A DNA stretch of 64,000 nucleotides. Source: Haliotis rubra. Its lineage: Eukaryota. The stretch's first letter is position 1, and every line of letters begins with the position of its first letter. This document shows positions 24,991 through 64,000 of this stretch, piece by piece. Location: contig NW_025765225.1 of assembly GCF_003918875.1 (NCBI RefSeq), positions 1,240,001-1,304,000 on the forward strand, read 5' to 3'. The position numbers were made by a program, and so were the translations under genes. A model generated the notes under the pieces. It had not been told where the DNA came from. It saw only the letters and a list, made by a program, of their open reading frames with translations, and ran no database searches.

Positions 24991-27900
24991 TCATCGTCTG
25001 TGTACACGTTCCATCAGCAAAACAGCTCCAGCTACAACCACACCAACAAGAAGAGAGTAAAATGAAGACTGTACATCAACAAGGGTGACAGCTTGGCCTT
25101 TTGTCTTCGCCGGCTGTGAGCACTTGTTCTCTGGCCACCATGCTTGTGTCAGACGTTCAATGACACCCGTGTCGAGCAACCGCAGAATTCTAAAAGTAAA
25201 GACATGAAACTGTTTCTGAGTGGGGTATCCATGTATTTTGATGGAATTTCAGTGGATTAGCACTGTAAACCATATGTCTGGGTCAGTACCAACAGATACT
25301 CGTGCATAAAAGTGCAAGTGGTCTTGAAGGCGATTTTCAGCTCCATTTAACCTCATCTCTCTTTCACTGTGCCCAATGAATAACTATACTCACATGTCCG
25401 AGACAATCTTCTTGTATGGAGATCCATTTGGAAAAGCAAAGCTATATCTGACAGGGAAGAAATCATCTTTGAGTATGCGCAGCTGGCAGTTACGACTCCT
25501 CCAGTAGTTGGAGAGCGGACGACCTGCTATAAAGGCATAGTCCTCTGTTAATAGTTTCTTCAGATGCACGTCTTGATAGGGACTTAGAATATCTGGATCC
25601 GATTGGCTGAATTTCTGTATACCTTCAAGAAGGAGCTTGTGCATGGTCACGTTGGACATCTAACAAAACAGACAATATACTCGTACATGTACATTTATCA
25701 CTGTTTTGAGTACGCAGTGGTGACTAAAAACAATCTTAGTTTAAATTTGTCACTGTTTGAAAAAGTATTTTGAGATATAATTTATCATGTGATAAACAAA
25801 TGCTGGTCATTCCGGATTTGAGTATAATACCTGACGGTAATTGACTATTTCTAATTATACTGTTCACTTGTATTTGTTTTGTTAAGTAACACAGTCTGCT
25901 ATATCTGCTCCAGCTATGGCTTCATGAAAGCGGCGTAATCAAGTGTGGCCGACAGACCAGTAATTGATATATTGTACTACAAACAATAATCTACGTTGTC
26001 GGGTGCGTTTACGCGCTACCACCTGTCAGCAAACCTGACCACCCGATCCTTTGTCGTTTGTAGCTTCCAATCTGCTGTTGTAGGGTTGTATGAAAACGGA
26101 TGATAAACATTGTAGATGTTTTGTTCTGAACTACAGCCTACATTGTCAGTATTCACGTGTATTCATGCATCCTTTAGGACTATGCACACATTAGTCAGAT
26201 AGCGATGCATCAAATATAAGGTTATCAAGGACACCTTCATCAAAGCACGATGACGGCATTGTATTAATCTGTTGTAATATATTGAAAATGTATTGCAAAT
26301 TTAATGAAAACCTGTCCCATGCGTACCTTAAACTGAGTCAGAAAGCTGCCCCCGCTGACACAGCCCCATTTGAAATTAGTCTGGGTTGCCATCTCCATTG
26401 CCGTCTCAAATGGTGGCGATTGTGTGTTGACGGTGAGGAAGGCGATGAGGTTACAACAGAAACTAGCAGTCATGAGGCACGTTAGTGCCCACCAGCAGAC
26501 AAACAGAACACGACTGCGGGCATGCCGAAACATCTGTTCATTGCCTGGAAGTAAAAGCGCAATGACCATTCTGTAAGAACAGCCAAAACGTCTAGTTAAT
26601 ACAGACTAGGATTAGACACACTGGCCAAACAAGCAAGTGTTGTTGAAGTCAGTCTAAGATTGCATTGTCACCAATCTGCTTCATACTGCAAGATGTGTAT
26701 CAGTATAAAGGGGACTATTACCCTAAGTACATTGAAACAATGTCTCATATTCACACGAATATTAGGTATTAAATCAGTACATATCCAGGCTGTGTGATGA
26801 ATTTGGAGATGTAATTGTGCTCTTATTTAAAACCAGCAAACTTTCATGGAACTTTGACACGATTATGATATTTGTTTACATTTCCCCAGAACATTCACAA
26901 ATATATCATGGCAGAGAAGATGATATGGTTGTTCTCGAACAGCATCTGGAAACTATTGCTGGTGACCATAGTGATAAAAAAATATATATGGCTGGTGACT
27001 TTAATGTCAGAACAAAAGACTTTGATGACTACATTCAAGATGACAGTATTAACTTGCCTATAGGTACGGCGATGACATTGATTGATATCCATCCGACGAA
27101 TTTTGTATGGCAAGAGCGAACAAAGACACTGATTATAATAATTACGGTATAAAACTGACAGAATTTTGTTGTACTTTCGGGATACATTTATTTAACGGCA
27201 GACTTTTTAATGATAAAAATAGCAAATTTTACATGTTTTACACACAATGGTCAGAGTGCCGTTGATTATATGCTGGCATCAGCAGATGTATTTCCTAAGG
27301 TAACATATTTTGGTATAGCTATGCGTGATGAGTCTAACCATTTTCCATTGTACTGTTCTTTAAGAATTCATCTAAATAATTGTAATGTAAAGGAAGGACG
27401 ACCTGGTGAGAGGATTGATGTAAATGTGGGTAAATGGTACTGATGATGTCAATGAATGGTCAAAATATGTTTGGATAGGAAATGAAAGCCAAATATTTAC
27501 TGATAATTTTGTGTGTAACCTATCTGAGGTTTCTGAAGATTTGTGTGAGCAGATTCATACGGATACAGACAAAGCTTTAGCATCTATTATTAGCATCTAC
27601 CAATCAGCAGCAGTCAATTCTAAGAGGATTTATCGGAGTAGTTGGGGTAGAAGCAATAGTCAACCTCCATGGCGGGACAGGGATTTAGAAGATCTTAAGC
27701 AGAGAAAGTATCAGGCACTTAGAGCTCATAGAGATAATGGTAAGGATATTTGTGAGTTCAGAACATTAAGAAATTTATTGGCAAAATTAGATTGAAGCAA
27801 AAGAAATATTTATCAGCTGAAAATGAAAACAGACTTAATTGACTGTAGAAATAATGCTAAAGTATTTTAGAGGGAGCTGGACAAGTCATTTTAGCAATCT

Positions 27901-30900
27901 TTTATGTGCAGATGGTATTACTAGTGATTTCAGTCAGGATAATTTGGAAAGTCATGTAAATATATATTCAGTCTTAATGCTCCTATTACCCATATGTAAG
28001 TTTGTTTCATATAGATAGGATCGGATTAAACAAATCACCTGGTCCTGATGGCTTACCTGTAGAGTTTCTAAGGAAAACTAAGAATCATATTTCACCTTTA
28101 TTAGTTTTAGTGTTCAGTAAGATATTTGAAAGTGGCAATTTTCCCAAAGAATGGGGTAAGAGTATTATATGTCCTCTGTTTAAGTCTGGGGATAGGCATT
28201 CTCCTGATAATTATCGAGGAATTTCTTTAATCGATGCAGTATGCATAGTGTTTTGCTCCATTCTTAACTATAGGCTTCAGAGGTGGTGTAATGAACATGA
28301 TGTTATTGACGAAGCACAGTTTGGCTCCAGAGCCAATCGTTCAACTATTGATGGCATATTCTGTTTGCACTCTGTTCTCTTTTCAAAGGCCTTTGACTCA
28401 ATTAACTATGATGTATTGCTGAGTACCTTGGAGGCAGTAGGTGTGGGTGGTAATTTTATGAAGATCATAGTATCGATGTATTCTAACCTGACAGCTTGTG
28501 TTGGACTCACAAACGGTTTGTCAAATTATTTTAGTTGTAATATTGGTGCATTTTAAGCCCACAAATGTTTATCATCTTCATAAATAAGCTGATAGACTGT
28601 GTGAAGGAGAGTGGTGGCAGAGGTGTTTATTTATCTCATACTTTTGATAGTATGTTTGTTTTTATGTTTGCCGATGATGTGACATCTATGGCAGATTCAT
28701 GTCTACAGTTACAAAAAGATCTATGCTCTGGAGCTTTTTTGTGACAGTACGGGTATGAAAGTTAATCTGAGTAAGACAAAGGTAATGGTTTTCCGTAATG
28801 GTGGTCCATTGAGGAAATATGAAAGATGTTTTTTCAAGGGAGATCCAATAGATGTCTTTTCGTCATACAAATACCTTGGTCTTGTTTTTACACCCAAACT
28901 CTGCTGGAGTAAGGCACAGGATTCTCTTGCAGCACAGGCAAATAAAGCATTATTGGCTATGTACACTTATTCAAGGAAATTCGGCAGCTTATCATGTAAG
29001 GCCGTGTTTAAGATATTTGATGCTACAGTTGTTCCAATATTGTGTTATGGTTCAGAAGTATGAGGTGTAAATTATTGTAAGAAAATCGAGAGTTTTCTAA
29101 TTAAATTATGGAAATGGATTCTTAAAGTTGGCAGGAATACTACAAATAATATGGTTCTTGGAGAATGTGGAAGAGTCCCACTTCAGTATATCTATACGAC
29201 CAGAGCGGTTAAAGAACAAATACACTTTGTTTTTTTTACTCTTTTAACTACTACATATGAAAGATTTGTGGTTAGACTTATGCGGAACACCAAATTTATT
29301 CTTTAAAAACTTGTGGTTAATTAATACCGAGCGATTAAAAGTTGCCAAAAAGTCGCCTGCTTCACTCTCGCCCGCCAACGAAACCACAGACAGGTTACGT
29401 AACTCTGTCGCCAGAGCTCTGCAGTGACGTCATATGAGGAACGATTTTCAGTTAGTGGTATAGAAAGTGTGTAGCACGCTCATCATTTTGATGATTTCTC
29501 GACATCAACGACGACATGCCGAATCGTTGCTTTGTCGTCAATTGCTCCTAGACCGAAGTGAGTAGTTTTAATGACGGGGTTTCATTTATAGCGATGCCAG
29601 TTAGTGATTTATGTATTTGTACCCCTCTAGAGTATATGTGATCTTTAAGTACTGGACAAAACTATGAGAATGAAAATAGGAATATGAATGAAAATAGGCT
29701 ACCTTTGCAATGCTATAATATGATGTTGTTACAGGATGAAGGTGGAAGAACAAATTGGGTTACACATATCAAAAACATTTTGTTTAGACTTGGCTTTGAA
29801 TTCGCTTGGGTTGCACAAGATGTAGGGCACCTCGATACCTTTAATTCGGCATTTAAGCAAAGCTGTTTGATAATCTCCATCAAAAGTTGGTTTCAGAATT
29901 GGGAGTTTTATCAAAGACACAATACTATAAGCAGTTTAAATCATTATTAACCCATTTATGCATAGGGTCTTAGATTTTCATCACATTTTGTGAGCTGATT
30001 TCTTTTGGCAAGCAATGAAAGGTATGAGGTGTCATTTTACCAGTAAATAAATTTTTCCATTCTTTTTTACACTGCAAAAGTACGCCCCATAAATGGGACA
30101 ATATGCAGATGAGTGAACTTAAATTAGGTAATTTATTAGGCTTAGGTGGGGAAATCAACCTCTTAAATCTTAAAAATTGACTCTTTTCATTTGAAAGCTT
30201 TCATGGAATAAAACTAAAATGGCTTTTATATGAAATGTGTATTAACAAATTGAAACCTGAACATTTCATGGACATTCTTGATTCCATTAAATGTTTTCTG
30301 ATGAACTAAACATCATAGTTGATGAATGTATCCTTAAGTCATCTGCTGTTCCTCACATATGTAAACCATGGGTACAGGGTTATTTTACAATGTTAGGTAG
30401 GTGCATTCATACAGACATCTGGAGGAAGTGAAGGGCCTTGGGTAAGTATTTCTTGATGTGTTATACTAAATCATGTAAATCTTTACTTCTGTTTCTTACA
30501 TAAACCACATTTTATGCTAGTAAGTAGATTATTGGTTTCCAAGTGCCAAACTAATCAATTATTGATCATGCGTTCCATGGTTTTGCAAACGCAGCTAGTT
30601 ATTGAAATTTGTCGATAATTTGAATGATCGGTATGGTCACGTCCAGGTTAAGGAATTGTAAAAATTATAGCATCACGGCATGAAGAAGGAAATTCCACTG
30701 ACGTCCAAATGCTATCAAATATATTTAAAAGGGTTTCTAAACACGATTCTGTAAGTGCTTCGGGAGTTGATACTAAATGTTATCAGTTCCTGCAGCAGTA
30801 TCTTGAGCTTGTTTGAAGCTCATGAATAGAAAACATTTCATTATAATCTTCCCCAGCAGAGGACTTAGGGATACATTCATCAACTATGATGTTTAGTTCA

Positions 30901-33900
30901 TCAGAAAACATTTTATGGGATCAAGAATGCCCATGAAATGTTCAGGTTTCAATTTGTTAAAACACATAGTTTCATATAAAAGCCAGTTTGGTTTTATTCC
31001 ATGAAAGCTTTCAAATGAAAAGAGTCAATTTTAAGATTTAAGAGGTTGATATCCCCCACCTAAGCCTAATAAATTACCTAATTTCAGTTCACTTATGTGC
31101 ATAATGTCCCATTTTTGGGACGGCACTTTAGCGGAAAATTGAGTATGGAAAGAATGGAAACCATTTTCATTTTATTTTTCTATTTGAACAACGAAAGTTT
31201 AAGCACATTATAATGAACTTACATAGTTAAAATAGGGACCAATAAAAAATAATCCTATCTCACACTTCGCCGAATTGACAGGGGACCTGCCTTGCCACTG
31301 CAAGTGGCCATGCTTAAAGAACTTAAACTCTACAAGTGATGTAAATGGTTAAACCACTAAACAATTTACTCAGCTTCATGCACGTCTATACTGCAAGTTT
31401 CTGTATTCAACTATAGGAGAGAAATGCTTCCTAGAAGTACCCGTCCCCAAAAAGGGACGATATGCACCAGTGGGTTAAATGTTGAATTGGTATACTGAAC
31501 CACAAAACAAATGTCGCACCGATAGCGGTTTCTTAAAGCACACACTTTAATTCACTCTAATTAACAATCAAAACCAAGGATTGAGTTCAAATTTGACAAT
31601 TATGGTTAACACATTTTCGGGAATCACATTTAGAGTTCACACAAACAAAATGACCAAAAATGGTACAGTAAAGATACCTCAAAGTCAGTATTGTGTGTGA
31701 TGTAAATCACTTCATGTTTGAGTTCAAACAACGCTGTATAGATATTAATATACAACACTGGAATAGTAAAATAAGAAACTTATCATTTCTTGTAAATTAT
31801 AGTACATTTAAGTCACTCCTTGAACCTGAACTGTATATTTCCTGTGGCGCATTACACAAAGATCTTATGCAAATGTTGATCAAATTCCGATGCCAATCAC
31901 ATAACTTGAATATACAAAAACAACGTTTTTCAAAGATAATTGTCCCATATAAAGAATTAGTTTGTAACATTTGTACTTTAACCGTGCTTGAAGACGAATA
32001 TCACTTGTTGCTAATATGTCCATTTTATAACCGATGCAGATCCCAATGTATTCCAGCCTATTTCTACAGCCCACCTTCAATTGTCAAATTCCGAGCCCTT
32101 ATGAAGATACACAGTGTCACTGTTCTTAAAGGAATATGTATATTCCTGAACCAAAACCTACGTTAAAATAATTGTATTATGAATTATATTTCAACTCTAC
32201 ACACCATGACAATGTTGTATTACCTGTTGTACTCTTGGCCACATGGCCTTCAATTCTGAATAAAGTGATCAAAGTGATCAAAGTATTGTGTGTGGCCTCT
32301 ATGGGCATCGATGAAAGCGTTGCATCGTCTGTACATGGAATGAATTAGCCGGTTTATGAAGGCCATAGGCACTTGTGTCCATACTCTGTGAAATGCCTGA
32401 TCGAGTCCAGCAGCAGTTGTCGGCCTTGGCTGCAGGTCATTCAGTCTTCTTTGAATCTCGTCCCAAAGGTGTTCTATTGGACTCAAATCAAGACTGAGTG
32501 CAGGCTATTGTAGGGTTTGGAGTCCAATGTTACTCTGGCAGTGTGGGCACGATCTTTGTCTTGCTGGAAGATGTGATTTCTGTTAAGGTCCAAAATGTGG
32601 TACAAAGTGGGGTCTTATGACTTGGTCAATATAGCGAGCAGCTGTCACGTCATTTCCTCATCCTGGACCGAGATTCTGGAACACCACGGTGCTAACTATC
32701 TGGTTCAGACCGATTGCACCCCCCCACCATGATGATTGGACCACCCCATGAGTCTTTTTCAACAATACTCTATTGGAAAACAGTTCCCCACGCCTTCACC
32801 ATACTCTCACTCTGCCATCGACTGTCGAAACACAGTATCGGCTTTCAGGAGATAAAAAGCACAGTTCTCCATTGTCGATAACGCAAATTTCAATGCTGAC
32901 TTGCCCATTGCAGTCGGTTTTGGCGATGATGAGCGGTGAGGACAGGACTGCAATATGTGACAGCAGAGGTTTCTCCCACGCAAACGTCGACGCATTGTAT
33001 CGGCATTGATGGGTCTGTTGTGAGTCCCAATGGTCTGGCGTGCTGTTTCCGTCTCTCTGGGGAAGCGATCCTTGAGATGGTGTCGGCCTTGACGTTGTGA
33101 TGTTACTGAAGGTCGCTTACTGCGTGGACGGTCTTGGATGCTGTTAGTGACCTGATACCGCTCCTGCAGTCGGTTGACTGTCCTAACATGAACATTAAAA
33201 TGATTGGCTACCCTCCGTGCAGTCTGCCCAACTTGCAATCGTCGCAAGACTTGGTTCCTCCGATCTCTCGTAAGTCGTGCCATGACGATTGTGTCAAAAC
33301 AAACATGATTTCAGGTGAGTTTGGGACTCGCTTTCATTGGTAGGGTTGTCACTATATGCACGTGCCTTTTCATTTTCACGAATGTCATACGGAACCTTTT
33401 ACCACGTCTGCCAGTTTAGGTGCGTTTGGTCGATATGCTTTTTCATCGGAAAACACACTGATGTTGGTAATAACTGTCAATTTGGATTGAAAAACATGTT
33501 AATAAAACGATACAATCATAATAAAAACACCATTTTGTATGAACAAAATCTTGCATTTGGTTTTGAAAAGCGACGTTTCTTTTGTGGTTCAGTATATTTA
33601 TCATCAGATTTTCCTTTTTGTATTGGGTCTGCCATCGCAAGATTTAGATGTTGTACTTATGGACTAGCAGTAGAAACAGGCCGTTATGATGGTACTAAAT
33701 ATATAAGGCGACTCTGCCCTTTTTTGCCTTAAAGATGTATTATCTTTTGTGGAAGATGAATATCGTGTTCTATTTGCAACCATAAGAAGCCCTTATATTT
33801 TCAAGCATGTAACTTCAGTATCACATCAGTCTTTTATGTATATTATGGCATCAGATAAATGTAGTGTTGTCTATGATATTGGTCAGTTCTTACTTAAGGT

Positions 33901-36900
33901 GTATAAACTTAGAATTGCCCTTACACGTGAAATTGATGTGTGATATGTGTACATATGACAGGTAAATATATATACATGACAGCTCTTGCCTGGAATAGTT
34001 CATGGACTCTATGTTGTGTATTTATGCGCGGATTGTGAAAGTTAATCCAACGCCAAGACTGCATTTTGGGCCAATGGCCTTGATATTGGAATAAAGGTCT
34101 GTCAGTCTATCTGAATCACTAACCACTAGGCCTAGACTTAGTGGGCATTGCATTCTAGAACATTGGCTTTCTAGATATTTTACAATATTCAAAGACCGTG
34201 TGTTGAGGTAATTGTTCATTCTGCTACAATACTTTACTTTCAATATCTAATAAACTCCTCACAACGGAATCATGATATCATGCCCCTTCCCCCCGACACA
34301 CACACACAGACACAGACACTCATACTCACACGCACGCACACACGCACACATATACACACACTGTGTATCTACACAGAGAAATCTGAACGTTATGACTACT
34401 CCGTCCCAGTAGAGACACCAAATACGATGGTCGCCAGCTAACATCGAAGAAGAGCTTGTACTAATCTCGCACTCACCTTGACGAAAAGGTACTCCAAACA
34501 TGTACCAGAAAATATCAGCTCTCTTTAGCGTCCTTGTTGATGCCACTGCATTTTTACAATCCGACAATTCCACAGCACTGACCATAAGAAACACGACGAT
34601 GAAGGCCAGTGTTAAGCACACATACACCTCCCACTTAAAGGGCCAAGTGAACGTCCAGATCTTCCTTGTGTCATCTGCAGACTCTCTGACTATAATGCTC
34701 GTTGTGTCCATCATGAAGGGGAAAGCAAAATCTACAATTTTGTCTCGTTCGTACGTTATGCTTATATCCGTTATTGCCATCTCTACTGCCTGACAAAAAA
34801 CAAACACGTGACAAAAACATAAACTGATGAGTAAATGAGTGAGTGAGTGAGTTTTGTTTTACGCCGCTGTTACCAATGTGGCAGCAATATCACGGCAGGG
34901 GACACCAGAAATGGGCTTCACATATTGTACCAATGTGGGGAATCGAACCCGGGTCTTCGGCGTGACGAGCGAACGCTTTAACCACTAGGCTACCCCACCG
35001 CCCCGACGGGTACATTAAAGGTATTCACTTGAAAATTGGATTTGACCAGAAAACAGCTTACGTCATTACAACTTTTTCTAGGCTGAAAACAGTCGCCGAA
35101 AGGCGACAAACTTACTATGACACCACTAAATGCATCATCATCCAATAACCATTTCTTGTTTGTGGATTTTTGTTCCACCATAAAACTGCTATTAATGTTT
35201 TTTTGTGAACTCAGTCCGTTTGTATTTGAGGGTTTACAAACACCCACATCTGTTCTGATCTGAATTTAATGACATAATTCAAGCTAAGGTGACGATATAT
35301 AAAATAAACTTTCTGATATGTAATACATAAACTTATCCACAAGTGAGAGTCAAATCCAACATGAATTAAAAAGTGCATAATAATGTTGACAACGAACCTT
35401 ATTTTGCAGCTGACCCACAAGTCCTGACCATTTACCATTGCCAATATGTGCTCCGTACTGTTTGTCTTCCGGCTGAACGAATTCGTAACTACAAACATAA
35501 GATGATAGGTTATGGACCTGGATCTCGTACTGGTGTAATGTCCTTTTCGCTGTATATTTACATGTCCATCAGAAATTGTAGGGATTAATGCCTCTGGATC
35601 AGCGTGCGACACTGTTTGTTCCATCTAAAAGACCTGTATTCACAATGGTACTAAGAAACATCGATCTTTGTTATTGATGTCGTCCCCACCAAATATAGTT
35701 CCTTCTGTTGTGTCAATTTGCCAAATATTCTGTTTCTTTCAAATTACTTTATTCTATTGATACGTATTATCATTTATCTACACAATATAACATAATGCTC
35801 GCGTGTACGCCAGTGAATAATCTGTGTGGACTATCCAATGGATTGGATTCCAATCGGCGTTGAAAGGAAAAATAGAACATGATAAGAATGCTGTCCTGTG
35901 CTTTACAAGTAAGCAACGTGTGAATCAGTTTATGGTGTCTCGGTCGGTGTAATACGGAGTAAAATCATATTCACTCCAATCCAAGGCATACTCACGTAAA
36001 GTTCAATCTGTCCCTTACAATGTTGAACAAGTCCACACAGAAACCGGAATAAGTTTGATTGCGGTGAAAAACGAATGGAGGCCACTGAAAGCAATAATTT
36101 ATGTACCATATTTCTGACGAGCGATAAGCCCTGAAAAGTTTACGGAGGTATTGTCAGCATCACACCCGGTTAAGACTCAGACCTGGATCACTTAGGGTTT
36201 TGTCCAACAACATGAAGTTAACACGCCGTCATATGAAACTGTCATAATTTTACAGCTATATTCTCCAAAACAGTGTTTAAACCAAACCCAGTCCATCATT
36301 CAATGTCTAAATCAAGATAAATGTATTACGAATATGGATCAAAGAACTCATAAATATGTCTAATAATTTCAGAGGTTGATACAACGCTTAAGCAATAGCA
36401 AGTTCAACTGTAGGGATAGTTTGAAAGGGAAGAAGAGGCGGTCGAAGAATAGAACCCAGCTATGCTTTGCGTTTCCTATTCTTGTTGTTGCTTACTATAT
36501 AGCTTGCTTTGTACATTTAACTCACCTCAAGAGTCCCCACAAGAAACTTGCGTCCATTGAAGCCTCGTCGACTGTTTGGGTAAAGGTCCTCGTCTACGGA
36601 CTTTTCTTGTTTGGTAATTCTGTGAAAATGGCGTCCTTCCTTACTCCACAGCAATGTGTAATAGATTAACCGTTCCTAGAACAAAGTGCTTTTATACACG
36701 TATGGGCTGACACTGCTTGGTGAGATTATGTTCAGTAATTATCACTGAGAGTTTTTGTGTGTGTGTACGCGCTGTCCGTAGAGCCCCATACTAACGTACG
36801 AACTCAATGATTCAAACAATTTAACACCACGTCATTGGCCCTTTTTTACTTTAAGTCGTGAGAGAGACGTTTCGATACAGATTCTTGTACCGTTCTCAAG

Positions 36901-39900
36901 CNNNNNNNNNNNNNNNNNNNNNNNNNNNNNNNNNNNNNNNNNNNNNNNNNNNNNNNNNNNNNNNNNNNNNNNNNNNNNNNNNNNNNNNNNNNNNNNNNNN
37001 NNNNNNNNNNNNNNNNNNNNNNNNNNNNNNNNNNNNNNNNNNNNNNNNNNNNNNNNNNNNNNNNNNNNNAGGAAAACAACAAACTAACATAATCGGCTTC
37101 TTGGGAGTAAGCTGATAAAGCCAGTTAGTAAACAAATGGAAGCACATGGAAGCCAGATGTGCCCTTTTCTCATTGATTGAAGATTATTCACAAAATATAT
37201 AACAAAGACCACATCTCGTATTGGTTAATGTTTTTTTCTAGCAGTTTCTAGAATATATTGGAATATAGTGACGCGCAGACTTCAATGTTGACTTAGCTCC
37301 ATATGTGTTTATTTACTGAGACATTTGAAGTATAAAATTAAAATGATAAAAAAATAATTTTCTATATCCTTTGGTTATTTTATCTTATTATTATATCTGA
37401 AATCTCTGACCTAACGATGGAATTTGTCACAGCATCGAAATCGAAGACAGGGAATGCCATTCCCAGTTGGTACAGGTTCTATATTATGTTATATGACTAC
37501 ATGTTATTGATCAAATCAAACACTAAACATACCGAGATACACGTCACGGGATAACAATACAAAGAAAGTAAGTATTGACCACGAAAGAACATCTGATAAT
37601 ACTTTCTGAAATTGTTCGTCTATGCCGCTTCCGTTATCTTTTGTCTTCTGTGGTCAATAAGCGTCTTTGCTTGTCAGCGAATTCTGTTGTGTATATAACT
37701 CCAGGAGTTGATGATTTGTTCCACGTGTACAATACTATCTCAGGTTACTGGAAATTGCAGTAAAGGCACCCTATATGTTCAGGCATTTTCTTATGTTGTA
37801 TCGTATTGCCTCCCCATTCTCTTCTTACTACATATGCATTCATGACCAGCTCGTGTATTCAGCGAAAAGCCGAATGGTGACTCGTGTCCCCCAAGAAGGT
37901 TCCATGTTGGCGTATCAGAACTACTTTATACAAGAACGACAAGTCTATTTCTGCTTAAATCCAATCGTGATGAGCCTTAAAGAAGCATGCGACTGTAACC
38001 ACTTTGATAGGTTTAACAAATAAATATAACACTGATAGTATTGTTTGCTGTAAATATGTTCTAAGATAATTATTCTCAGCTGCTCTTCTTTTATTTCCAT
38101 ATGTATATACCCAGTTACGGTATTGAAGCTAAAACAGAGGTTGCAGTTAAATGTGTCTTTAGTTTAAACATTAAAGAATCGAAAATGTGATTTTACCTGG
38201 ACTCATTTGTCAATACAAAATGAAATTATACTGAATTTTTACCGAGGGAAAATGAATTACCCATAACAAATCATGTTTGATCGGCACTGTTGTTAATACA
38301 ATAAATGCATTTGTCAGGGATCTTTATAGGTCATCCACATACGTTAAGGATTTGTGCAGGGGCAGATAACGATCTAAATTAAATAGATCGTCACAGAGAA
38401 AATAAACTCACAGGAAAACATGTGAGCCGTTATGTAAACAAACGGACCTTTTGTACTCAGGATGTTTTTATCAAAGTATCTCAATCCTTACGCGCAATCT
38501 GCACTGTTTGTTTTATTTTATCAGATAACATTCATCGATTGAGGAACGAGTTTTCATGCAGACTACGGAAACGGTCGAGTTCTGACGAAATCAATGTTCA
38601 CACACTGAAGAAGTCTTTACGTTCAGTTCTGTATATGTTCTTGTGTTCTCAGTAGTATGGTAACAACCACCCAGGTGCCAAACGCCATTAGTAAGTGTAC
38701 ATGTGTCTGATTATCAAACATGACATGCATACTGATCGAATTTCAAATCCATACACACTTAACCACATCCGAAAACCTGGTGCTGACGACAAAAGGCTCA
38801 AACAATACCTTTTTACGAAACAATGACATATGCCATAGACAAACATTACAATTACTTTCACAAGATATGAGTAATTTCTTGAGTACTTGATCATTTCTTG
38901 TAGACATTAATGTTTTTTAAAAAGGCTTAGGTTGACACAAACCATCTTGAACTTTTTTCTTATACGAAATCGATTTCACGACGACAGAGTTTATTCCATA
39001 GATGTTTAGTTTGGTTAAAAGTAGTCGATCTTGAAGGATGAAAGCATGGTAGGGAAACCATGACAACACTAGAAACATGTGGGCTGGCGTTGTCCTGCAG
39101 CAGAAAAATCCCTAATTTAGGGGCTGATGACGAGAGGCAGGAGACGTTGGAGAATTTCTTCTCGGCGTCGTAATGCTGTCAAATTGCCTTCCCCGAGTAG
39201 CATGTTAGTTGATATGGTGTAGGATATAGTTTCCCTCATCATGACCTCGTCACTCGGAATCTTTTCACTTCAACAACACAGTTTTTATTACGTTCATTGT
39301 TACTTTATGTACACATCTCGAAGATGTATTGAAAAACGAGATTCGCCACTGAACCAAACTCTACTCCAGTATCTCAGATTTCATGTCTGAGTGTTCACAC
39401 AACACCGTCAGTCTTGGCGTCGTGGAACAGCCCCGCAATACGTCCCGAAATCCAAACTCACAAAGACGATTACGTGTTGTTTGAGCTGTTCCCCAACGGA
39501 GACCAGACACATTTGAAACGGCGACCGCTCCTGTAACGATCCAGATTTCAGAACTGGATGAAGCTGTCCTGAGCTTCAAATTTGATCCTTGGTGTGGTTA
39601 AAGATCATGGGCGATCTGTTTTAGACCCATCCCGTTTGTATCTGTCTCCAAAGACATGAAATTAGAACTTAAAATGGCGGTTAAGTCATGGCAAGGCGTC
39701 CAGTCGTGGCATATCGAAAATTAAATGCAGTTTATGTGACAGTAAACGGTTTTTCGAAAGAATACGACCCCTCTATACATCCACTCCTACACGCAGTTTC
39801 CCTAAAAACCATGTACGAAATGTAAGCAGCTTATGTTTCACGTATATTTCGTGACACGTTCGAAAATCCGTTTCAAATGTCAATAAATCACCAAACGGTG

Positions 39901-41882
39901 AATGTGGTCGATGCAACCTAATCAGAAAACACTATAAAGTAGCCCTAAGAATTCTTAACTTTGATCGTAGCCAATGTGTTAAGAATGGGCTTAAGAAGTG
40001 CGTAGGGCTGCGAACGTTTCGAGAATAGCTAACCTGGTATAAGTAACTGTATAAGGAATGTTAAGCTATATATGCATATTAAATTAATAAAGAAAATCAG
40101 CATTGCCTTTCCTTTTGGGCAGAGTACATTACGTGTGAGCATAAAGTATAATTCAATTTCTACACAGACTGATACATACCTGGGAACATGAATTTTGTGT
40201 AGATGACGTGATGACAATTGCTGCAACGTTGTCGAGTACGACATCCAGAACGGGTAGAGGTTTAGGCTGACGTACGGTTATAAGCCATCTTGAAGCATGG
40301 CGCAACATGGAGTCCACGTGATTATCCTGGGAGTACCTACTAGCCTTAAGAAGAGAGTTCATAACCGGTTAATAGCTCAAACTAGTTCAAAACGTTATCT
40401 ATTTTCAATAACGTTAAATCGAACGATTACATCTCTTTTAACATGCACCATCCGTCAACATTGTAGTTTGATAAGTAAAACAGCTATGTTTGATTCTGGA
40501 ATAAAGTAAATGACAAATACATAAGGAGGGACCGTGTGGTCCGTTGTGGGATATCGCTCGTTCCTAACGCTATCAAGCATTTATTTTCTATAATAACGGA
40601 AATATGTTTTCACCTGTGACATGATACGTGCCAAACACGTGGCCGAACACATGATCAAGGTTGTGTCTTCCCCAGAAAAGCTGCTGAAATCAATTGAAAT
40701 GTTGCTTGTGTACGTATGAATACGCATTTGAATCCCTGCCGACGACAGTTTGACTGACAGCCACGACGCCGAGGCCTCTGCAAGTGAAAGCGACAAACTT
40801 CTTTCAATAATTACAGAAATATGATTGTACGACTGAACTATATCGTAAGCAAGCCTTTATGGATCACTATCACATTGTGATGACGCCAGGTGAACGTATT
40901 CTTCCGTTCCGAGGGCAATCGTCCCAAACACATGCAAAGGCAAATCCACACGAAAAGAATACGGCAATATATGGTACAAGTCTTAATACGTTTAAGAATA
41001 ATAATGCACTCGTCGTGGGCATAAAATGATTGTTATGATACTCTTGATCTATCCAGATTTATACCATATTGAAACATTAAGTCTAAACATGATGATGACA
41101 TTATCTGGACAGTGGAACATCATGTCAACCGTATTGCAAACAACATTATACAATCATCTAGTTGATAAATCCCATAAAACTACATTACCTTCACTTGAGT
41201 CATGAATAATAGTTACAGTATTCCACCTGAGGGTTGCTACCAGCCTGAGAATGGTGCCTAAAGCCTTCGCCGTGCCCGGGGTACGGGGATCGCTATATGT
41301 GTAATGACCAAACAGGGCATCTCTTGCTTTGTCTCCCTTGGTAAATGTCCAGTTTGTGTGGACATTGTCATCACCTATACAAGGCTGAGATGTATAGCAA
41401 CCAGTTCCATCAAAACCACAGTTGATACTGTTATCAGGTACACAAAGTTGAGTTGTACAACACACAATTCCATTACAATCACCGTTCATGTTGTCATCAA
41501 CTAAAAACAGTTGAGTTGTACAGCAATCAGTTACATTGCAACCACCGTTGATGTTGTCATCAACTATACAAGGCTGAGCTGTACAGCAGACACTTCCATT
41601 GCAACCACCGTTGATGTTGTCATCAACTATACAAGGCTGAGCTGTACAACAGACACTTCCATTACAGACATCGTTGATGTTGTCATCAACTATACAAAGT
41701 TGAGTTATACAGCAGACTGTTCCATCATAACCACTGTTGACTTCGCCATCAACTTTATAACGTTTAACAATAACTCGATCCGTGCCACCAACAAATAAGC
41801 CATCGGAGGAATAAAATGACCAAATCAAAAGGAAATATTTTACAACTGACAACAGCGATGGGATATTTTGCGATATTGACAT
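24991..41882 (-). CDS. Divergent ionotropic receptor (IR / iGluR-family ligand-gated channel), ~782 aa; exons 41189-41882, 40614-40777, 40180-40344, 36526-36675, 35996-36084, 35398-35488, 34477-34789, 26327-26544, 25394-25659, 24991-25189
   Basis: S1 motifs WPPFV, YSGFCVDL, WSGLVGQL, ITYER..VDF; M1 after WPFKWEV; pore FWYMFG..FRQG; M3 SFCCNLIAFLT; S2 YSFAFPNGSPY, TGVIERL...WW; M4. All GT-AG and phases consistent (2349 nt). Exons 1-3 are less certain than exons 4-10. Confidence 0.88.
29213..29644. mobile_element. Kolobok-like non-autonomous DNA element with TTAA TSD
   Basis: TTAA at 29209-29212 and 29645-29648; imperfect TIR agaacaaatacact / agtatatgtgatct; removal restores the LINE reading RAVKYWTKL; THAP-like start MPNRCFVVNC at ~29516. 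Confidence 0.75.
29951..31474. mobile_element. piggyBac-like non-autonomous element (TTAA TSD, CCC...GGG ends) with a ~265-bp internal inverted repeat
   Basis: ttaa|cccatttatgcat ... atgcaccagtggg|ttaa; removal restores LINE FKSLLNVE; ~30083-30347 is inverted at ~30854-31122. Confidence 0.8.
31493..33594 (-). mobile_element. Tc1-like transposon (decayed transposase starting at 33283), TA TSD
   Basis: TIRs tactgaaccacaaaa.aaa.gtcgc / gcgacgtttcttttgtggttcagta; HTH start MARLTRDRRNQ...; SPIEHLWDE and GHTQY* C-terminus; frameshifted. Confidence 0.92.
31700..32281 (+). mobile_element. 5'-truncated LINE with 13-bp TSD inserted at the end of the Tc1 transposase
   Basis: KFRCQSHNL, CNIC..EDEYHLLLICP; tail aataaagtgatcaaagtgatc; TSD agtattgtgtgtg at 31687-31699 and 32282-32294. 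Confidence 0.88.
34290..34362. repeat. Imperfect (CA)n microsatellite
   Basis: Seen directly. Confidence 0.9.
34835..35004 (-). mobile_element. SINE family A, full length
   Basis: ggggcggtggggtagcctagtggttaaagcg head; (actc)n tail. Confidence 0.9.
36902..37069. other. Assembly gap (N run) in IR intron 3
   Basis: Run of Ns. Confidence 1.
39040..39700 (-). mobile_element. Highly decayed Tc1-like transposase relic
   Basis: Minus-strand WFSGESR (FSDES-like, ~39340-39358) and LLQDNASPH (~39078-39104) motifs. Confidence 0.6.
41364..41753 (-). repeat. Coding 63-bp tandem repeat (6 copies) encoding VDDNINGGCNGSVCCTAQPCI-like units in IR exon 1
   Basis: Seen directly in DNA and in the ORF 41154..41882 translation. 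Confidence 0.92.
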
Positions 41883-43556: not shown

Positions 43557-43772
43557 GTACCCGTGACGATCCGGGTTAGAATTGGTCTTTGGTATTTACT
43601 GTAACCCATGCTTGTCGTAAGATGGTTGACACATGTCATCGGTTCCCAATTGCGCAGATCGATGCTCATGCTGTTGATCACTGGATTGTCTGGTCCAGAC
43701 TCGATTATTTACAGACCGCCGCCATATAACTGGAATATTGCTGAGCGCGGCGTAAAACTAACCTCACTCACC
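43557..43772 (+). mobile_element. SINE family B with internal deletion
   Basis: gatccgggttagaattggtctt ... gatgctcatgctgttgatcactggattgtctggtccagactcg ... gcggcgtaaaac. Confidence 0.85.
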
Positions 43773-44731
43773 CTCTTGTGTTGCCACTTGTTGAGATATA
43801 CTGAGGGAAACAAAAAAGGGAAGACTACTTTATGGCAGTGTTCCTTTATTTATTCTCGGATTTCCTCCAGTAGCGCTATACACAGCTGGTGATGAAAACT
43901 GGAAAATATTATAGAAACGCTTGAATTTTCCCGTGTTCCTTTGTTTGTTTCTCTCGGAAATAAAAATGTTGTATAAGATAAATATCAACTTCGCGTGTGA
44001 AATACCATTAGGATACTCACGAATAGCTAGCATCATTGTTAAGCGTTACTGATTCATAATACTAATGATACAAGATTAGTCGAAATCGTACAACAAAGTC
44101 GGTTTTTGTCAGGTATTTCTAATGAATTATAAATTGTATGTCTTTATTTCCTTGCTATGTAAGGCACATCAGTTTTTAAGCTGATTCCTTTAGCGTTAAA
44201 CATACGTGCAAATGACGGGATTGGGGATTTAGTGCAAGATATCAACATACGTGTATATATAGTCAACGAGAACACTTCTGAAGTTAAACGCCCATTACTC
44301 TGTGAATTGTCACTCTATTTTACGGGAAATCGAGTGTATAGCAAACAATACTTTAACGCATAATGGCCTTGTTTATACAGTTTTATCGACCGTAACTAGT
44401 CCCGAGGCTTAATCCTCAGATAATCCGTGACCATCGGTAAATTCAGGGTAACTCGCGCACCTCGGCACATTTGAAGCCTTCATTGGGTGATTAATATCAG
44501 AGGAATCCTGAATAGGCTGCTATCACAACACCGGCTAGACAGACAGTTACAATTTTACACCAAGCCAGTCAGGGTGTACAGTAAAGTGCTACCTTTGTAC
44601 ACTATCCTTTTCCCATTTAGCTTACGCTGAGTATGTTTTTCTTTCAGTGAATAGATTTATCTCCGAAGCCTTTAATACCTCTTCCACGTGAGCTTCTAAA
44701 GCGAGTGGATATGTAAACACGTTGATTTCAC

Positions 44732-44825: not shown

Positions 44826-45704
44826 ATGGACATGAGACAATCCCGTAACATACGTAGTCGACGAAGACTTGTTGTAAGTTATGCACAATTTTCTCATATT
44901 AACTGTTGATCACTATTCATAATATACATGCATGATTAACATGCTCTCGTATATACTCGAAACCTTGGCATTCTCGATGGATATATATGTTATGGATGGA
45001 ATGATATCAACTGAGTCTAGGATTTTGATGACAGTTCCTCCCTCATTGTCTTTCTATTGACTTTAAACATGAATATAAACATGAAGCCACAGATACTATT
45101 GAACTTTGAGTTTACTATAAATACACACTAAATTTGGATGAAATGTATGTAACTGATAATTCTAAAAAACTTTCAGTATACCACGGCTTCGTCACCAGTC
45201 ACGGGGATATCAAGACTCACTCTCCATAGTCCATGTCACGTCACGTCATCTCATGACAGTCCACGTCCACTCAGTGACAACCCAACCTTCTCTGACAATG
45301 ACGTACTACATGACAGTGGCTTTGAATCATGTGACAGCAGCGAAGAGGTAAGCGTTCAGTAGAATACATGTATACAGTGTTTCAAAAAGAAAGGAATATG
45401 GATAGTGTCTTGTTTTGGTGGTTCAAACTCAAAATTAATTACTGTAGATTTACATAATGTATACGAGCATTTGTTAATAATACTTATTTTTTTTCAGTTG
45501 ACACCTGACAGCAGACCCGGTGGCTGCATTCATTCAGACACAAGTCTGTCCAGTGTCAAAAGAAGTCTATTTACAAAGAAACGATCACACGACGATGTCA
45601 AGGGATATCCAAGCACTAAGAAATCAAGGCTCGGAAACAGTGATGCTCAAGTGACATGTGACGTTAATCTTTATATTCCGGGCGCCTTAATGGACATCGA
45701 CTGA
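44826..45704 (+). CDS. Orphan 141-aa Ser-rich, probably disordered protein with cyclin-docking, beta-TrCP-degron and NLS motifs; exons 44826-44873, 45177-45347, 45498-45704
   Basis: Donors GTAAGT and GTAAGC, acceptors tttcag and tttttttttcag, all phase 0 and stop-free: MDMRQSRNIRSRRRLV/YTTASSPVTGISRLTLHSPCHVTSSHDSPRPLSDNPTFSDNDVLHDSGFESCDSSEE/LTPDSRPGGCIHSDTSLSSVKRSLFTKKRSHDDVKGYPSTKKSRLGNSDAQVTCDVNLYIPGALMDID*. TATA upstream; AATAAA at ~46718. Confidence 0.8.
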
Positions 45705-62574: not shown

Positions 62575-64000
62575 TTCCCCTTCTTACTGTTTCAAAATCA
62601 ATGGAATACTTGTGTGACTTACGAAAACATCAACCGTAACCATCACGAACTATGACACCATGCATTTCTAGTGGTGTTGACTGGTTACGGGACTTAAATA
62701 TACCCTAGCGAAGAGAACATGCCGTCGGTGGTTTCTCCATAGAACGAAAACCACAGTAGTAATGTTTGAAATTTAACAGTTGGGTGACACCTATCGGGTA
62801 AACGGATATGATGCTGGCAAATCTAGAAACATAATTCGGGCAAATGGGAATTTCAACCCACGATTTTAGGTTAAACAAATTCAAATCTACAATGACAGTT
62901 CTAGGATCAGTAGATACATAATGTACACCTAGGCATAATTCATATATTCTTACCCTTTGCCTGCACCAGGCTTTCACTTCATATATTAAGCAGCAAATGG
63001 GTATTGCTCTGGCTTGACTGCTATACAGTCATTCGCAGCAATGGCCACAATACCTTTGTGATGTTGTTCACTGTATCTGATAACAGTCCAGGTGTATCCA
63101 GTTTAGCCCGCAAGAGCATTTCACCGATTTAGATTAACCATATATCATGTACAGCGGTCGGAGTGGTGTAAACACACGTTATATTAGCGTGACATTAACT
63201 AATGCGATAACCGACTTCGTCAATTGCGTTTTTGCCACATCCTATGGAAAGTAGTGTGAGTAGAAATATTACTTTACAGAGCCGTGGGTAGGCCCGTTAG
63301 TTGAAATGTTACGTTGTGATGCATGATGCAATCGATCTCTCTCTCTTCCTACGTATTTAGTGTCATTGTGTATGATTGGATTATCATTACATTATGTCAC
63401 AGTATGTCACCTATATAATCTACATGTAATTTCGGAGATATTTCCAAGAAGCTGTCTAATTTATGAGGATTACTTCAACTTGGGCTAAAAATACTTCACG
63501 TATGACATCCATGCATAAGTAACTGCGTGTGTGTATGTGTGTGCGCGCGCACGTGTGTCTGTGGTACAAAATAATTTCGCTTCTTTAATCCTAGCCCACT
63601 CAGGTACCGAGCTGCAATACGCATACCTGGATACCGCATCCAGACACAGTAAAGCAACTCTGAGCAAACCAGCCCCTATTTTATATCCCCTGAATGCCGA
63701 CTGTCATGCTGGGTACTAACGCGTTGCTATAACGCGAATTAAAACAAATCTCGTTATTTAAAACACACGAGAGTTTACGTGGGTATGTGCACTAAAGCGT
63801 TCGTCTTATCAACAATACACCCATACCTTTAAGCCCTCTGCCTGTCTTCACAGCAAATCTGGAAAGTATCAACTGTGGCAGACAGCAAATTCAAAGTGTA
63901 CATTGGTATAAATTACTTCTCTCCACGATAACATGACACCCCGTACTTTTCAGTATAAAAGATCATGGGTGTTTACCGGATTCAACTCAGTTGGGTTCAC

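What the first reader, a model, noticed from the sequence alone, without database searches (positions are those of the whole stretch)
41364..41753. Ionotropic receptor with an N-terminal array of six Cys-rich 21-aa repeats
Seen: between the signal-like N-terminus and the IR amino-terminal segment (LRWNTVTIIHD) lie six in-frame units, consensus VDDNINGxCNGxVCCTxQ(P/L)CI. They hold ~19 Cys, many Asp/Asn residues and NxS/T sequons. The units have diverged substantially, yet there is no stop or frameshift. I know of no iGluR/IR with such a module. Inference: a minisatellite recruited as an extracellular disulfide-rich or metal/Ca-binding solenoid, a potentially new receptor architecture.
Basis: partly seen in the sequence, partly recalled or inferred. 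Interest (0 to 1): 0.7.

Follow-up and report, generated by a model that had tools for sequence, protein, structure and literature searches.

The report
In-frame cysteine-rich repeat in abalone receptor gene
An abalone gene for a glutamate-receptor-like ion channel carries, in its first coding exon, an old 63-base tandem repeat that stays in frame and would put six cysteine-rich 21-residue units at the front of the receptor; no transcript data could be found, so it is unproven that this part is made or useful.

Summary
A 63-bp x 6.2 array with no indels lies at 41365-41754. It is in frame in a 242-codon minus-strand ORF that starts with a signal-peptide-like ATG at 41882 and ends at a GT donor at 41189.

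The ORF is exon 1 of an apparently intact gene. Ten exons (41882 to 24991) all have AG/GT borders and matching phases, 2349 nt in total. The S1, M1-M3, S2 and M4 exons match solved AMPA and kainate receptors. The gene is IR-like: the N-terminal domain is invisible to Pfam, and two of three glutamate-contact residues are changed.

The repeat has no relative among 1.84 billion representative proteins, Pfam, PDB sequences or the rest of this genome. It sits where the closest paralogue has about 140 non-repetitive residues.

Evidence that the repeat is a selected protein module is weak:
- pN/pS between units is 0.74, with no third-position excess.
- An open frame with 20 of 24 Cys kept has p about 0.03.
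- Non-coding minisatellites in this genome show open frames of up to 377 codons.
- AlphaFold confidence is low.
- No RNA run was available.
- A relative about 3% diverged has the array and shows no indel in the 660 exon bases its contigs cover.

Verdict: probably a coding minisatellite in a divergent receptor gene. A functional new domain is possible but unproven.

The parts
41189..41882 (-). Exon 1 (first coding exon, 694 nt, ends in phase 1). It holds the ATG at 41882, a signal-peptide-like start, the repeat array and the shared N-terminal-domain segment.
   Evidence: The ORF is seen. The ATG has A at -3, and the donor is GAAG|gtaatg. This ATG is among the most hydrophobic ATG-started ORFs in the 4.3 kb scanned, which includes its own ORF.
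41805..41882 (-). Signal-peptide-like N-terminus (about residues 1-26; the hydrophobic core contains one Lys).
   Evidence: Kyte-Doolittle 11-residue maximum is 2.26. AlphaFold2 predicts a helix at residues 10-24, at low confidence. No dedicated signal-peptide predictor was available.
41754..41816 (-). Decayed in-register unit '0' (43% identical to the consensus unit, no Cys).
   Evidence: The null is 26% +/- 6%, with a 99th percentile of 41%.
41376..41753 (-). Six 63-bp / 21-aa units. Cys stand at unit positions 9, 14, 15 and 20, and the motif D-D-N-I-N-G at positions 2-7. The central units 2 and 3 are 92% identical; the edge units are 70-78% identical to the others.
41313..41375 (-). Decayed in-register unit '7' (41% identical to the consensus; it starts GDDNV).
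41189..41312 (-). Non-repetitive tail of exon 1. This N-terminal-domain segment ends at an intron position shared with paralogues.
   Evidence: The tail segment LVATLRWNTVTIIHD aligns with the end of the equivalent exon of paralogue C1868 (BLASTP E 0.08; tblastx E 0.03). Other iGluR genes of the genome also end an exon at the equivalent ...D-x-D-E-G position. Pfam finds nothing.
40614..40777 (-). Exon 2 (164 nt). The acceptor is ...cacttgcag|AG and the donor CAG|gtgaaa.
   Evidence: It is homologous to the next exon of paralogue C1868 up to the same donor position (E 1e-4).
40180..40344 (-). Exon 3 (165 nt). The acceptor is ...ctcttcttaag|GCT and the donor CAG|gtatgt.
   Evidence: It is homologous to the third exon of paralogue C1868 (E 8e-4).
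36526..36675 (-). Exon 4 (end of the N-terminal domain and linker to S1). With the acceptor ...ctttgttctag|GAA it joins exon 3 in frame. Further exons between 40179 and 36676, including inside the gap, cannot be excluded.
   Evidence: It shares the motifs TLLW and (F/Y)PN...GFN.R with both paralogues.
36902..37069 (.). Assembly gap (168 N) inside the intron between exons 3 and 4. It was not filled.
35996..36084 (-). Exon 5, start of S1.
35398..35488 (-). Exon 6, S1 (...YG....G.WSGLVGQL...).
34477..34789 (-). Exon 7: end of S1 with the ligand-contact Arg kept, then M1 and the start of the M2 pore loop.
   Evidence: Pfam Lig_chan-Glu_bd E 7e-7. PDB GluA4/GluA2 E 6e-8, with the Arg aligned.
26327..26544 (-). 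Exon 8: M3 (SFCCNLIAFLTV in place of SYTANLAAFLTV) and the start of S2 (G-S-F in place of G-S-T).
   Evidence: Pfam Lig_chan 38.7 bits, above the cut-off of 30.8. PDB GluK5/GluK2 E 3e-11.
25394..25659 (-). Exon 9, S2. Gly stands where kainate and AMPA receptors have the Glu that binds the amino group. The two closest paralogues have Asp there.
   Evidence: PDB GluK2/GluK3 ligand-binding cores, E 0.002, with alignment.
24991..25189 (-). Exon 10: end of S2, M4, a 7-residue tail and the TGA stop.

Best explanation
The array is an old, in-frame coding minisatellite inside the first coding exon of an apparently intact but very divergent abalone iGluR-family gene. The gene is IR-like: its ligand site is altered and its N-terminal domain is not recognisable as an ATD.

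Shown:
- The repeat, its frame and a canonical exon chain from the ATG to the stop codon.
- The channel and ligand-binding exons.
- The lack of any relative of the repeat.
- The presence of the repeat in a relative about 3% diverged.

Inferred:
- The exon is translated as read. The mature subunit would then begin, right after the signal peptide, with about 130-170 residues of Cys/Asp/Asn-rich 21-residue units. These take the place where the closest paralogue has about 140 non-repetitive residues of its N-terminal domain.
- The array grew by replication slippage or unequal exchange. Its central units are the most alike and its edge units have decayed.
- Selection has kept the frame and most cysteines but little else.
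- The product is most likely a disulfide-rich, N-glycosylated, beta-rich spacer on a receptor whose N-terminal domain is degenerating. It is less likely a finely tuned binding domain.
For: - Array and ORF.
- Exon chain: ten exons all have AG/GT borders and matching phases. Exons 1-3 sum to 1023 nt, exon 4 is 150 nt, and exons 5-10 sum to 1176 nt.
- Paralogue colinearity: the exon-1 tail, exon 2 and exon 3 are colinear with three successive exons of paralogue C1868, ending at the same positions.
- Receptor exons: the S1, M1-M3, S2 and M4 exons match Pfam Lig_chan-Glu_bd and Lig_chan and solved GluA and GluK receptors.
- Upstream limits: the ATG at 41882 follows a 2.9-kb spacer up to a divergently oriented gene at 44826-45704. 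It is among the best signal-like starts. No N-terminal-domain exon was found upstream. Exact skipping of the array by the only candidate sites is out of frame and runs into a stop (read).
- Frame and cysteines: the array has 0 indels over six clear units and stays in register into two decayed flanking units. An open frame together with at least 20 of 24 Cys kept occurs in 2.6% of simulations.
- Relative: in a relative about 3% diverged, all 6 indels of the covering contigs lie in the intron or upstream, and none lies in the 660 exon bases covered.
Against: - No transcript evidence: no RNA run holds the stretch.
- No predicted protein in a library of 1.84 billion representatives contains this exon. 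Either no annotated model includes it or the gene is absent from that library.
- Units differ as often at codon positions 1 and 2 (13.1%) as at position 3 (12.7%), and pN/pS is 0.74.
- An open frame alone is expected in 23% of random trials. Other minisatellites of this genome show longer open frames.
- The signal-like core contains a Lys, and there is no positive n-region.
- AlphaFold2 gives no confident fold.
- Divergence from the relative is about 3.2% inside the array, against 3.1-3.6% for the contigs that also span flanking DNA.
- Each unit ends ...tgtatag, a possible cryptic acceptor in a usable phase.
Confidence: 0.55

Rival explanations
1. The array is not coding. It is a minisatellite in the 5' UTR or in a first intron that happens to be open. 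The real translation start or signal-peptide exon lies elsewhere and joins an acceptor at or after the end of the array.
For: - Every unit ends ...tgtatag. An acceptor at 41376/41375 would continue in frame if the upstream exon ended in phase 1.
- An open frame is expected by chance in 23% of trials.
- Non-coding minisatellites of this genome have open frames of 130-377 codons without visible indels.
- There is no synonymous excess between units.
- No protein model with this exon exists in the large library.
Against: - No candidate upstream exon was found. The 2.9 kb up to the next, divergently oriented gene hold no better signal-like ORF and no N-terminal-domain exon.
- The ORF has its own ATG with A at -3 and a hydrophobic start, exactly in the frame used by exons 2 and 3.
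- The array stays in register into decayed flanking units that are also open.
- There are no in-frame ATGs after residue 132 that could start a secreted protein.
Confidence: 0.2
2. The locus is a silent or decaying duplicate of an iGluR gene. The array is a neutral expansion that destroyed the first lobe of the N-terminal domain, and the rest has not yet collected disabling mutations.
For: - There is no close paralogue, and both ligand-site and pore motifs are altered: E to G, T to F, and SYTANLAAF to SFCCNLIAF.
- The two closest paralogues keep Asp at the amino-group site.
- The N-terminal domain is invisible to Pfam.
- Repeat units evolve nearly neutrally.
- Large transposon insertions lie in the introns.
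- No expression data exist.
Against: - All ten exons are open, with canonical splice sites and consistent phases over 2349 nt.
- At 30-40% identity to its nearest paralogues the gene is old, and a dead gene of that age would be broken.
- The paralogue's N-terminal exons are equally invisible to Pfam, so this is a trait of the subfamily, not decay.
- The array is shared with a relative about 3% diverged, without indels in the exon.
- IRs in general lack glutamate-contact residues and are functional (PMC2924276).
Confidence: 0.2
3. The array is a selected new extracellular domain: a disulfide-braced beta-solenoid, possibly binding calcium through the D-x-N-x-N-G loops.
For: - Cys at unit positions 14, 15 and 20 are nearly invariant. 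Synonymous TGT/TGC changes occur at positions 9 and 14.
- Keeping at least 20 of 24 Cys has p = 0.08.
- Both AlphaFold2 models place two short strands in each unit.
- D-D-N-I-N-G matches positions 1, 3, 5 and 6 of DxDxDG-type calcium loops. This match is from my own knowledge and was not tested.
- There is a weak PDB hit to a left-handed beta-helix protein (E 0.2).
Against: - Model confidence is low: pLDDT 42 and 47, with no residue at 70 or above.
- No Pfam, PDB or atlas relative was found.
- There is no purifying selection between units.
- The Cys count is odd (21).
- The calcium-loop match lacks the acidic residue at position 12.
Confidence: 0.15

Closest known systems
AMPA/kainate-type ionotropic glutamate receptors (GluA2, GluA4, GluK2, GluK3, GluK5; solved structures)
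   Same: The order is the same: S1, M1, M2 pore loop, M3, S2, M4. The S1 Arg that binds the ligand carboxylate is kept. The M3 gate motif is recognisable. Exon-level E-values run from 6e-8 to 3e-11.
   Different: No ANF_receptor-type ATD is detectable. The Glu that binds the ligand amino group is Gly, and the S2 Thr is Phe. SYTANLAAF reads SFCCNLIAF. The intracellular tail has 7 residues. A 21-residue Cys-rich repeat follows the signal peptide.
Variant ionotropic receptors (IRs) of protostomes (Croset et al. 2010, PMC2924276)
   Same: It has PF10613 plus PF00060 without a discernible PF01094. Its ligand-binding domain lacks some glutamate-contact residues. Its long N-terminus has very low similarity to the ATD, as described for IR21a, IR40a, IR64a and IR93a.
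   Different: Orthology to any named IR clade was not tested. Its nearest relatives are members of a large abalone-specific iGluR expansion, at only 30-40% identity. No IR is described with a Cys-rich tandem repeat. Chemosensory expression is unknown.
Coding minisatellites (VNTRs) in extracellular parts of surface proteins, e.g. MUC1 (60-bp units), platelet GPIb-alpha, yeast FLO/ALS adhesins (from my own knowledge)
   Same: The unit length is a multiple of three inside one exon. The central units are homogenised and the edge units decayed. The sequence is tolerated as an extracellular spacer, and the repeat is lineage-specific.
   Different: Those repeats are Ser/Thr/Pro-rich and O-glycosylated, whereas this one is Cys/Asp/Asn/Gly-rich. 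Copy-number polymorphism is not shown here, because the contigs of the relative break inside the array.
Short disulfide-braced repeat folds: beetle antifreeze beta-helix (12-residue units), thrombospondin type-3 calcium-binding repeats, hexapeptide left-handed beta-helices (from my own knowledge)
   Same: The units are short, contain Cys and are predicted to form strands. They include Asp/Asn/Gly-rich loops.
   Different: There is no sequence match: Pfam finds nothing and the best PDB E-values are 0.07-0.2. The 21-residue unit length fits none of them. The model is too poor for a fold comparison.

Membership tests
Ionotropic glutamate receptor superfamily (iGluR/IR) | Bipartite ligand-binding domain S1/S2 (Pfam PF10613 and the SBP-like fold) | tested here: met
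   The exon 34477-34789 hits Lig_chan-Glu_bd at E 7e-7. Its 29.8 bits for a single exon compare with a whole-protein cut-off of 30. The S1 and S2 exons align to GluA4 and GluK2 ligand-binding cores.
Ionotropic glutamate receptor superfamily (iGluR/IR) | Channel part M1, M2 pore loop and M3 with the gate motif, plus M4 (Pfam PF00060) | tested here: met
   The M3 exon hits Lig_chan at 38.7 bits, above the cut-off of 30.8, and GluK5/GluK2 at E 3e-11. M1 aligns. M4 aligns to both paralogues.
Ionotropic glutamate receptor superfamily (iGluR/IR) | Intact reading frame across the whole gene | tested here: met
   Ten exons have AG/GT at every internal border and matching phases, 2349 nt from ATG to TGA. 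Extra exons between exons 3 and 4 cannot be excluded, because a gap lies at 36902-37069.
Canonical iGluR (AMPA/kainate/NMDA type) | Amino-terminal domain of the ANF_receptor type (PF01094) | tested here: not met
   There is no Pfam hit on the exon-1 tail, exon 2, exon 3 or seven other candidate pieces, even at E up to 10. No hit in this window appeared in a genome-wide PF01094 search. The closest paralogue's exons are equally negative.
Canonical iGluR (AMPA/kainate/NMDA type) | Glutamate-contact triad: Arg (S1), Thr (S2), Asp/Glu (S2) | tested here: not met
   Arg is kept. Thr is replaced by Phe. Glu is replaced by Gly.
Variant ionotropic receptors (IRs) in the sense of Croset et al. 2010 | Divergent ligand-binding domain lacking some or all glutamate-contact residues; ATD absent or not discernible | tested here: met
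   The definition is quoted from PMC2924276.
Variant ionotropic receptors (IRs) in the sense of Croset et al. 2010 | Phylogenetic placement in the IR clade; expression in chemosensory cells | not tested
   No tree was built, because only exon pieces could be used. No RNA data were available.
Coding minisatellite (VNTR) | Head-to-tail units whose length is a multiple of 3, inside an exon and in its frame | tested here: met
Coding minisatellite (VNTR) | Present in mature mRNA; copy number varies in whole units between alleles or species | not testable with these tools
   No RNA run holds the stretch. The relative's contigs break inside the array at 41570-41604 and show about twice the flanking depth on units 2-3, so copy number cannot be read.
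Known cysteine-rich extracellular repeat domains (EGF, TSP type 3, LDL-A, granulin and others in Pfam) | Match to the family profile | tested here: not met
   Pfam gives 0 families at E up to 10. PDB sequences give a best E of 0.07. The ESM Atlas gives no usable hit. Among 1.84 billion representatives the only hit is P0001, a Cys-free 21-residue-period repeat protein, so the match reflects periodicity only.

The most novel reading that the evidence does not exclude
An abalone chemoreceptor-type iGluR has replaced the first lobe of its amino-terminal domain with a self-grown, disulfide-braced and possibly calcium-binding 21-residue repeat. This would be a new extracellular module for this channel family. 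It would also be a caught-in-the-act example of a receptor domain being overwritten by a coding minisatellite, possibly born from the domain's own codons. Units 5-6 align weakly and colinearly with the paralogue's V-V-A-V-T-T-Q-L strand (E 0.02).
Probability: 0.15. Interest if true: 0.65.

Novelty: new variant of a known kind. Interest (0 to 1): 0.4.

Why it matters
If the exon is expressed as read, this would, as far as the searches here reach, be the first iGluR/IR subunit with a tandem-repeat module at its tip. The amino-terminal domain governs subunit assembly in classical glutamate receptors and has been lost in most insect IRs. This locus would show one concrete route of that loss or replacement: a minisatellite expanding inside the exon. 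It would also give a natural test of whether the channel still assembles and traffics without lobe 1. For abalone biology it adds a candidate to the large, poorly described mollusc iGluR expansion that may serve chemosensation. If the exon is not expressed, the finding is an ordinary minisatellite beside a receptor gene.

Tried and rejected
**Searches for relatives of the repeat**
- Pfam, ESM Atlas and PDB sequences gave nothing.
- The exhaustive HMMER search of 1.84 billion representatives gave one hit, P0001. It was rejected as a periodicity artefact: it is Cys-free, with a 21-residue period.
- In the own genome, the DNA search found only the array itself. The protein search found only other open-frame minisatellites.

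**Expression**
The two runs listed proved to be genomic contigs of a relative about 3% diverged.
- The per-site difference table was cut off before the exon, so synonymous versus non-synonymous divergence could not be counted.

**Upstream N-terminal-domain exons**
- The first set of ANF_receptor exons fetched turned out to be guanylate-cyclase or mGluR types.
- A small HMM from iGluR-type exons was too weak. Our own exon scored 3.9 bits. Its best hit, at 55225-55341 (E 0.09), lies beyond the neighbouring gene, just downstream of the ABCG gene exons, and was rejected as chance.

**Gene structure and origin**
- tblastx against the two closest paralogues recovered the S1-M4 exons and the linker exon, but no further N-terminal exons between 40179 and 36676. 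That interval stays unresolved.
- A search with the paralogue's first N-terminal exon found no relatives in the genome. The idea that the unit derives from the domain's own beta-strand could therefore not be tested beyond E 0.02.

**Structure**
- Two AlphaFold2 single-sequence runs gave pLDDT 42 and 47.
- No fold search was run, because matches to such models are meaningless.

- The bacterial promoter scan is irrelevant for an animal gene.
Only exon pieces and phase arithmetic were used.
- The costly word-index protein search was not used. Its length window (127-404 aa) excludes full-length receptors, and the exhaustive search had already been run.
- N gaps were not filled, and nothing here was taken for human sequence.
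Full report
**1. Observation**

Tandem Repeats Finder reports an array at 41365-41754: period 63, 6.2 copies, 79% matches, no indels. It lies inside a minus-strand ORF, 41154-41882, of 242 codons from the ATG and 275 codons stop to stop.

In register, the six units are 41753-41376, and each encodes 21 residues. The consensus is V-D-D-N-I-N-G-G-C-N-G-T-V-C-C-T-T-Q-L-C-I. The units hold 21 Cys and, with the following segment, four N-x-S/T sequons.

The in-register 63-mers on both sides are still 43% and 41% identical to the consensus. The null is 26% +/- 6%, with a 99th percentile of 41%. The array is therefore really about eight units with decayed edges.

Units 2 and 3 are 92% identical, while the edge units are 70-78% identical to the others. 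This is the usual picture of an array homogenised in its centre. The DNA is single-copy in the genome.

**2. Where it sits**

The window is contig C335:1240001-1304000 of a 1.38-Gb genome in 2855 contigs. Earlier notes of the scan call this genome an abalone.

Downstream on the minus strand lie exons of an iGluR-family gene. I placed the borders by reading the sequence and checked them by arithmetic.

| Exon | Coordinates |
|---|---|
| 1 | 41882-41189 |
| 2 | 40777-40614 |
| 3 | 40344-40180 |
| 4 | 36675-36526 |
| 5 | 36084-35996 |
| 6 | 35488-35398 |
| 7 | 34789-34477 |
| 8 | 26544-26327 |
| 9 | 25659-25394 |
| 10 | 25189-24991 (TGA) |

Every internal border is AG/GT and the phases match. Exons 1-3 sum to 1023 nt, exon 4 is 150 nt, and exons 5-10 sum to 1176 nt. 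The total is 2349 nt.

More exons could lie between exons 3 and 4. That intron holds transposon remnants, a very high-copy repeat at 39815-40176 and a 168-N gap at 36902-37069. Because exon 3 and exon 4 already join in frame, any such extra exons would have to add a multiple of three bases.

**3. What gene it is**

- Exon 7 hits Pfam Lig_chan-Glu_bd, and exon 8 hits Lig_chan above its cut-off.
- Against solved structures, exon 7 aligns to GluA4 and GluA2 (E 6e-8), with the carboxylate-binding Arg in place.
- Exon 8 aligns to GluK5 and GluK2 (E 3e-11). It reads SFCCNLIAFLTV for the SYTANLAAFLTV gate and G-S-F for G-S-T.
- Exon 9 aligns to GluK2 and GluK3 ligand-binding cores. It has Gly where they have the Glu that holds the ligand's amino group. 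The two closest paralogues have Asp there.
- No part of the N-terminal region hits ANF_receptor.

By the criteria of Croset et al. 2010, this is an IR-like member of the superfamily (PMC2924276). Those criteria are PF10613 plus PF00060, no discernible PF01094, and missing glutamate-contact residues. Clade membership was not tested.

The gene has no close paralogue. The best matches in a large genomic expansion are 30-40% identical, at C1868 about 947-962 kb and C868 about 1587-1605 kb.

**4. Is exon 1 really the first coding exon, and is its frame the right one?**

- The 3' end of exon 1 (segment LVATLRWNTVTIIHD, then the donor) aligns with the end of the equivalent exon of paralogue C1868.
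- Exon 2 aligns with the paralogue's next exon up to the same donor (E 1e-4).
- Exon 3 aligns with the one after (E 8e-4).

Three colinear exon matches, together with the phase match, fix the reading frame at the 3' end of exon 1. That frame runs open for 231 codons upstream to an ATG with A at -3. The start has a hydrophobic core and is among the best signal-like starts in the 4.3 kb scanned.

Upstream there are only 2.9 kb before a divergently oriented Cdc25-like gene at 44826-45704. Beyond that lie exons of an ABCG transporter on the same strand. No N-terminal-domain exon was found there. Skipping the array exactly, with the only GT...AG pair at its borders, shifts the frame into a stop (read).

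In the paralogue, the equivalent exon has an open frame of 199 codons with about 140 non-repetitive residues before the shared motif. Here that place is taken by the signal peptide and the array.

**5. Is the array under protein-level constraint?**

The evidence is modest.

For constraint:
- There are no indels in six clear units, and the array stays in register into the two decayed flanking units.
- An open frame together with at least 20 of 24 Cys kept occurs in 2.6% of simulations that mutate the consensus as often as observed. The open frame alone occurs in 23%, and the Cys retention alone in 7.7%.
- Synonymous TGT/TGC changes occur at two Cys positions.
- The two runs found are genomic contigs of a relative about 3% diverged. 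All six indels of the covering contigs lie in intron 1 or upstream, and none lies in the 660 exon bases covered. About 2.3 would be expected there, giving P about 0.1. The array is therefore older than that split, and no frameshift allele was seen.

Against constraint:
- pN/pS between units is 0.74, and variable columns by codon position are 8/13/9.
- Differences from the consensus are 13.1% at positions 1 and 2 and 12.7% at position 3. Cys codons are not significantly more conserved than other codons (Fisher p 0.35).
- One plus-strand frame is also nearly open.
- Non-coding minisatellites elsewhere in this genome give open frames of 130-377 codons.

**6. What the product might be**

Two AlphaFold2 single-sequence runs gave mean pLDDT 42 and 47. 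They placed a helix over the signal-like start, two short strands per unit, and a helix over the shared tail segment. This is too poor for a fold search.

The loop D-D-N-I-N-G fits positions 1, 3, 5 and 6 of DxDxDG-type calcium sites. That comparison is from my own knowledge and was not tested. A beta-rich, disulfide-linked, glycosylated spacer is a reasonable guess. A defined solenoid or metal site is not shown.

**7. Relatives and literature**

There is no relative of the repeat in Pfam, the ESM Atlas, PDB sequences or the rest of this genome. Among 1.84 billion representative proteins, the single hit is a Cys-free protein with a 21-residue period, so the match reflects periodicity only.

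The same blank means that no public protein model in that library contains this exon. That cuts both ways. Full-text searches found no iGluR/IR with a Cys-rich tandem repeat.

**8. Verdict**

| Reading | Probability |
|---|---|
| Old coding minisatellite in exon 1 of an intact, divergent, IR-like abalone iGluR gene, sitting where paralogues have the first part of their N-terminal domain | 0.55 |
| Non-coding minisatellite with the true start elsewhere | 0.2 |
| Silent or decaying gene | 0.2 |

One experiment decides most of this: transcripts across 41882-41189 joined to 40777.

Noticed in passing
window 56500-63100, minus strand: Exons of an ABCG-type ABC transporter lie here, with Walker A, the ABC signature and Walker B visible in stop-to-stop pieces. 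This gene lies upstream of the receptor gene on the same strand. Earlier notes of the scan describe an ABCG5/G8 pair just beyond the window's end.
   Followed up: no
window 57890-58430, minus strand: A minisatellite here translates as ...LHVIYTGQLHVVYTGQ... in one frame and is open in three frames. It lies inside the ABCG region and is another example of a long open frame from a tandem repeat.
   Followed up: no
window 39815-40176: This is a very high-copy interspersed repeat. Summed contig depth is about 265,000 in run X1, against about 50 in the flanks, and many loose ends are present. It lies in intron 3 of the receptor gene.
   Followed up: no
window 32250-33310 (minus) and about 38900-39600 (minus): Two Tc1/mariner-type transposase remnants lie in introns of the receptor gene. 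The first is also present, at 42-67% protein identity, in the intron of paralogue C1868.
   Followed up: partly
window 26800-29100, plus strand: Reverse-transcriptase ORFs of a non-LTR retroelement lie inside the 8-kb intron between exons 7 and 8.
   Followed up: no
window 34830-35020 and 43610-43780: Copies of an abundant SINE-like element (translating ...GRWGSLVVKAFARHAEDPGSIPH...) lie here. They also occur several times in both paralogue loci. They produce strong but irrelevant tblastx hits.
   Followed up: partly
window 34296-34361: A (TG/CA)-rich microsatellite lies about 115 bases downstream of the exon 7 donor, inside the stop-to-stop frame that runs on from exon 7. It makes the mechanical ORF 34259-34807 look longer than the exon.
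   Followed up: no
L068 (C868:1575000-1584999), about 490-1530: A 53-bp minisatellite (not a multiple of 3) lies about 10 kb upstream of the linker exon of paralogue C868. It is clearly non-coding.
   Followed up: no
window 41439-41501 (units 5-6) versus L067:1679-2275:-: The repeat segment I-V-C-C-T-T-Q-L-C-V-P-D aligns with V-V-A-V-T-T-Q-L-V-S-P-D of the paralogue's N-terminal exon (E 0.02). The alignment falls at a colinear distance from the shared tail motif. This hints that the unit was born from the domain's own codons.
   Followed up: partly
P0001 (769 aa, metagenomic): This protein has about 17 Cys-free 21-residue repeats (...TLTRGAGVVDA.T.RVAIA.D...) followed by a beta-rich C-terminal part. 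It was the only hit of the large search. It is unrelated to the finding, and its function is unknown.
   Followed up: partly
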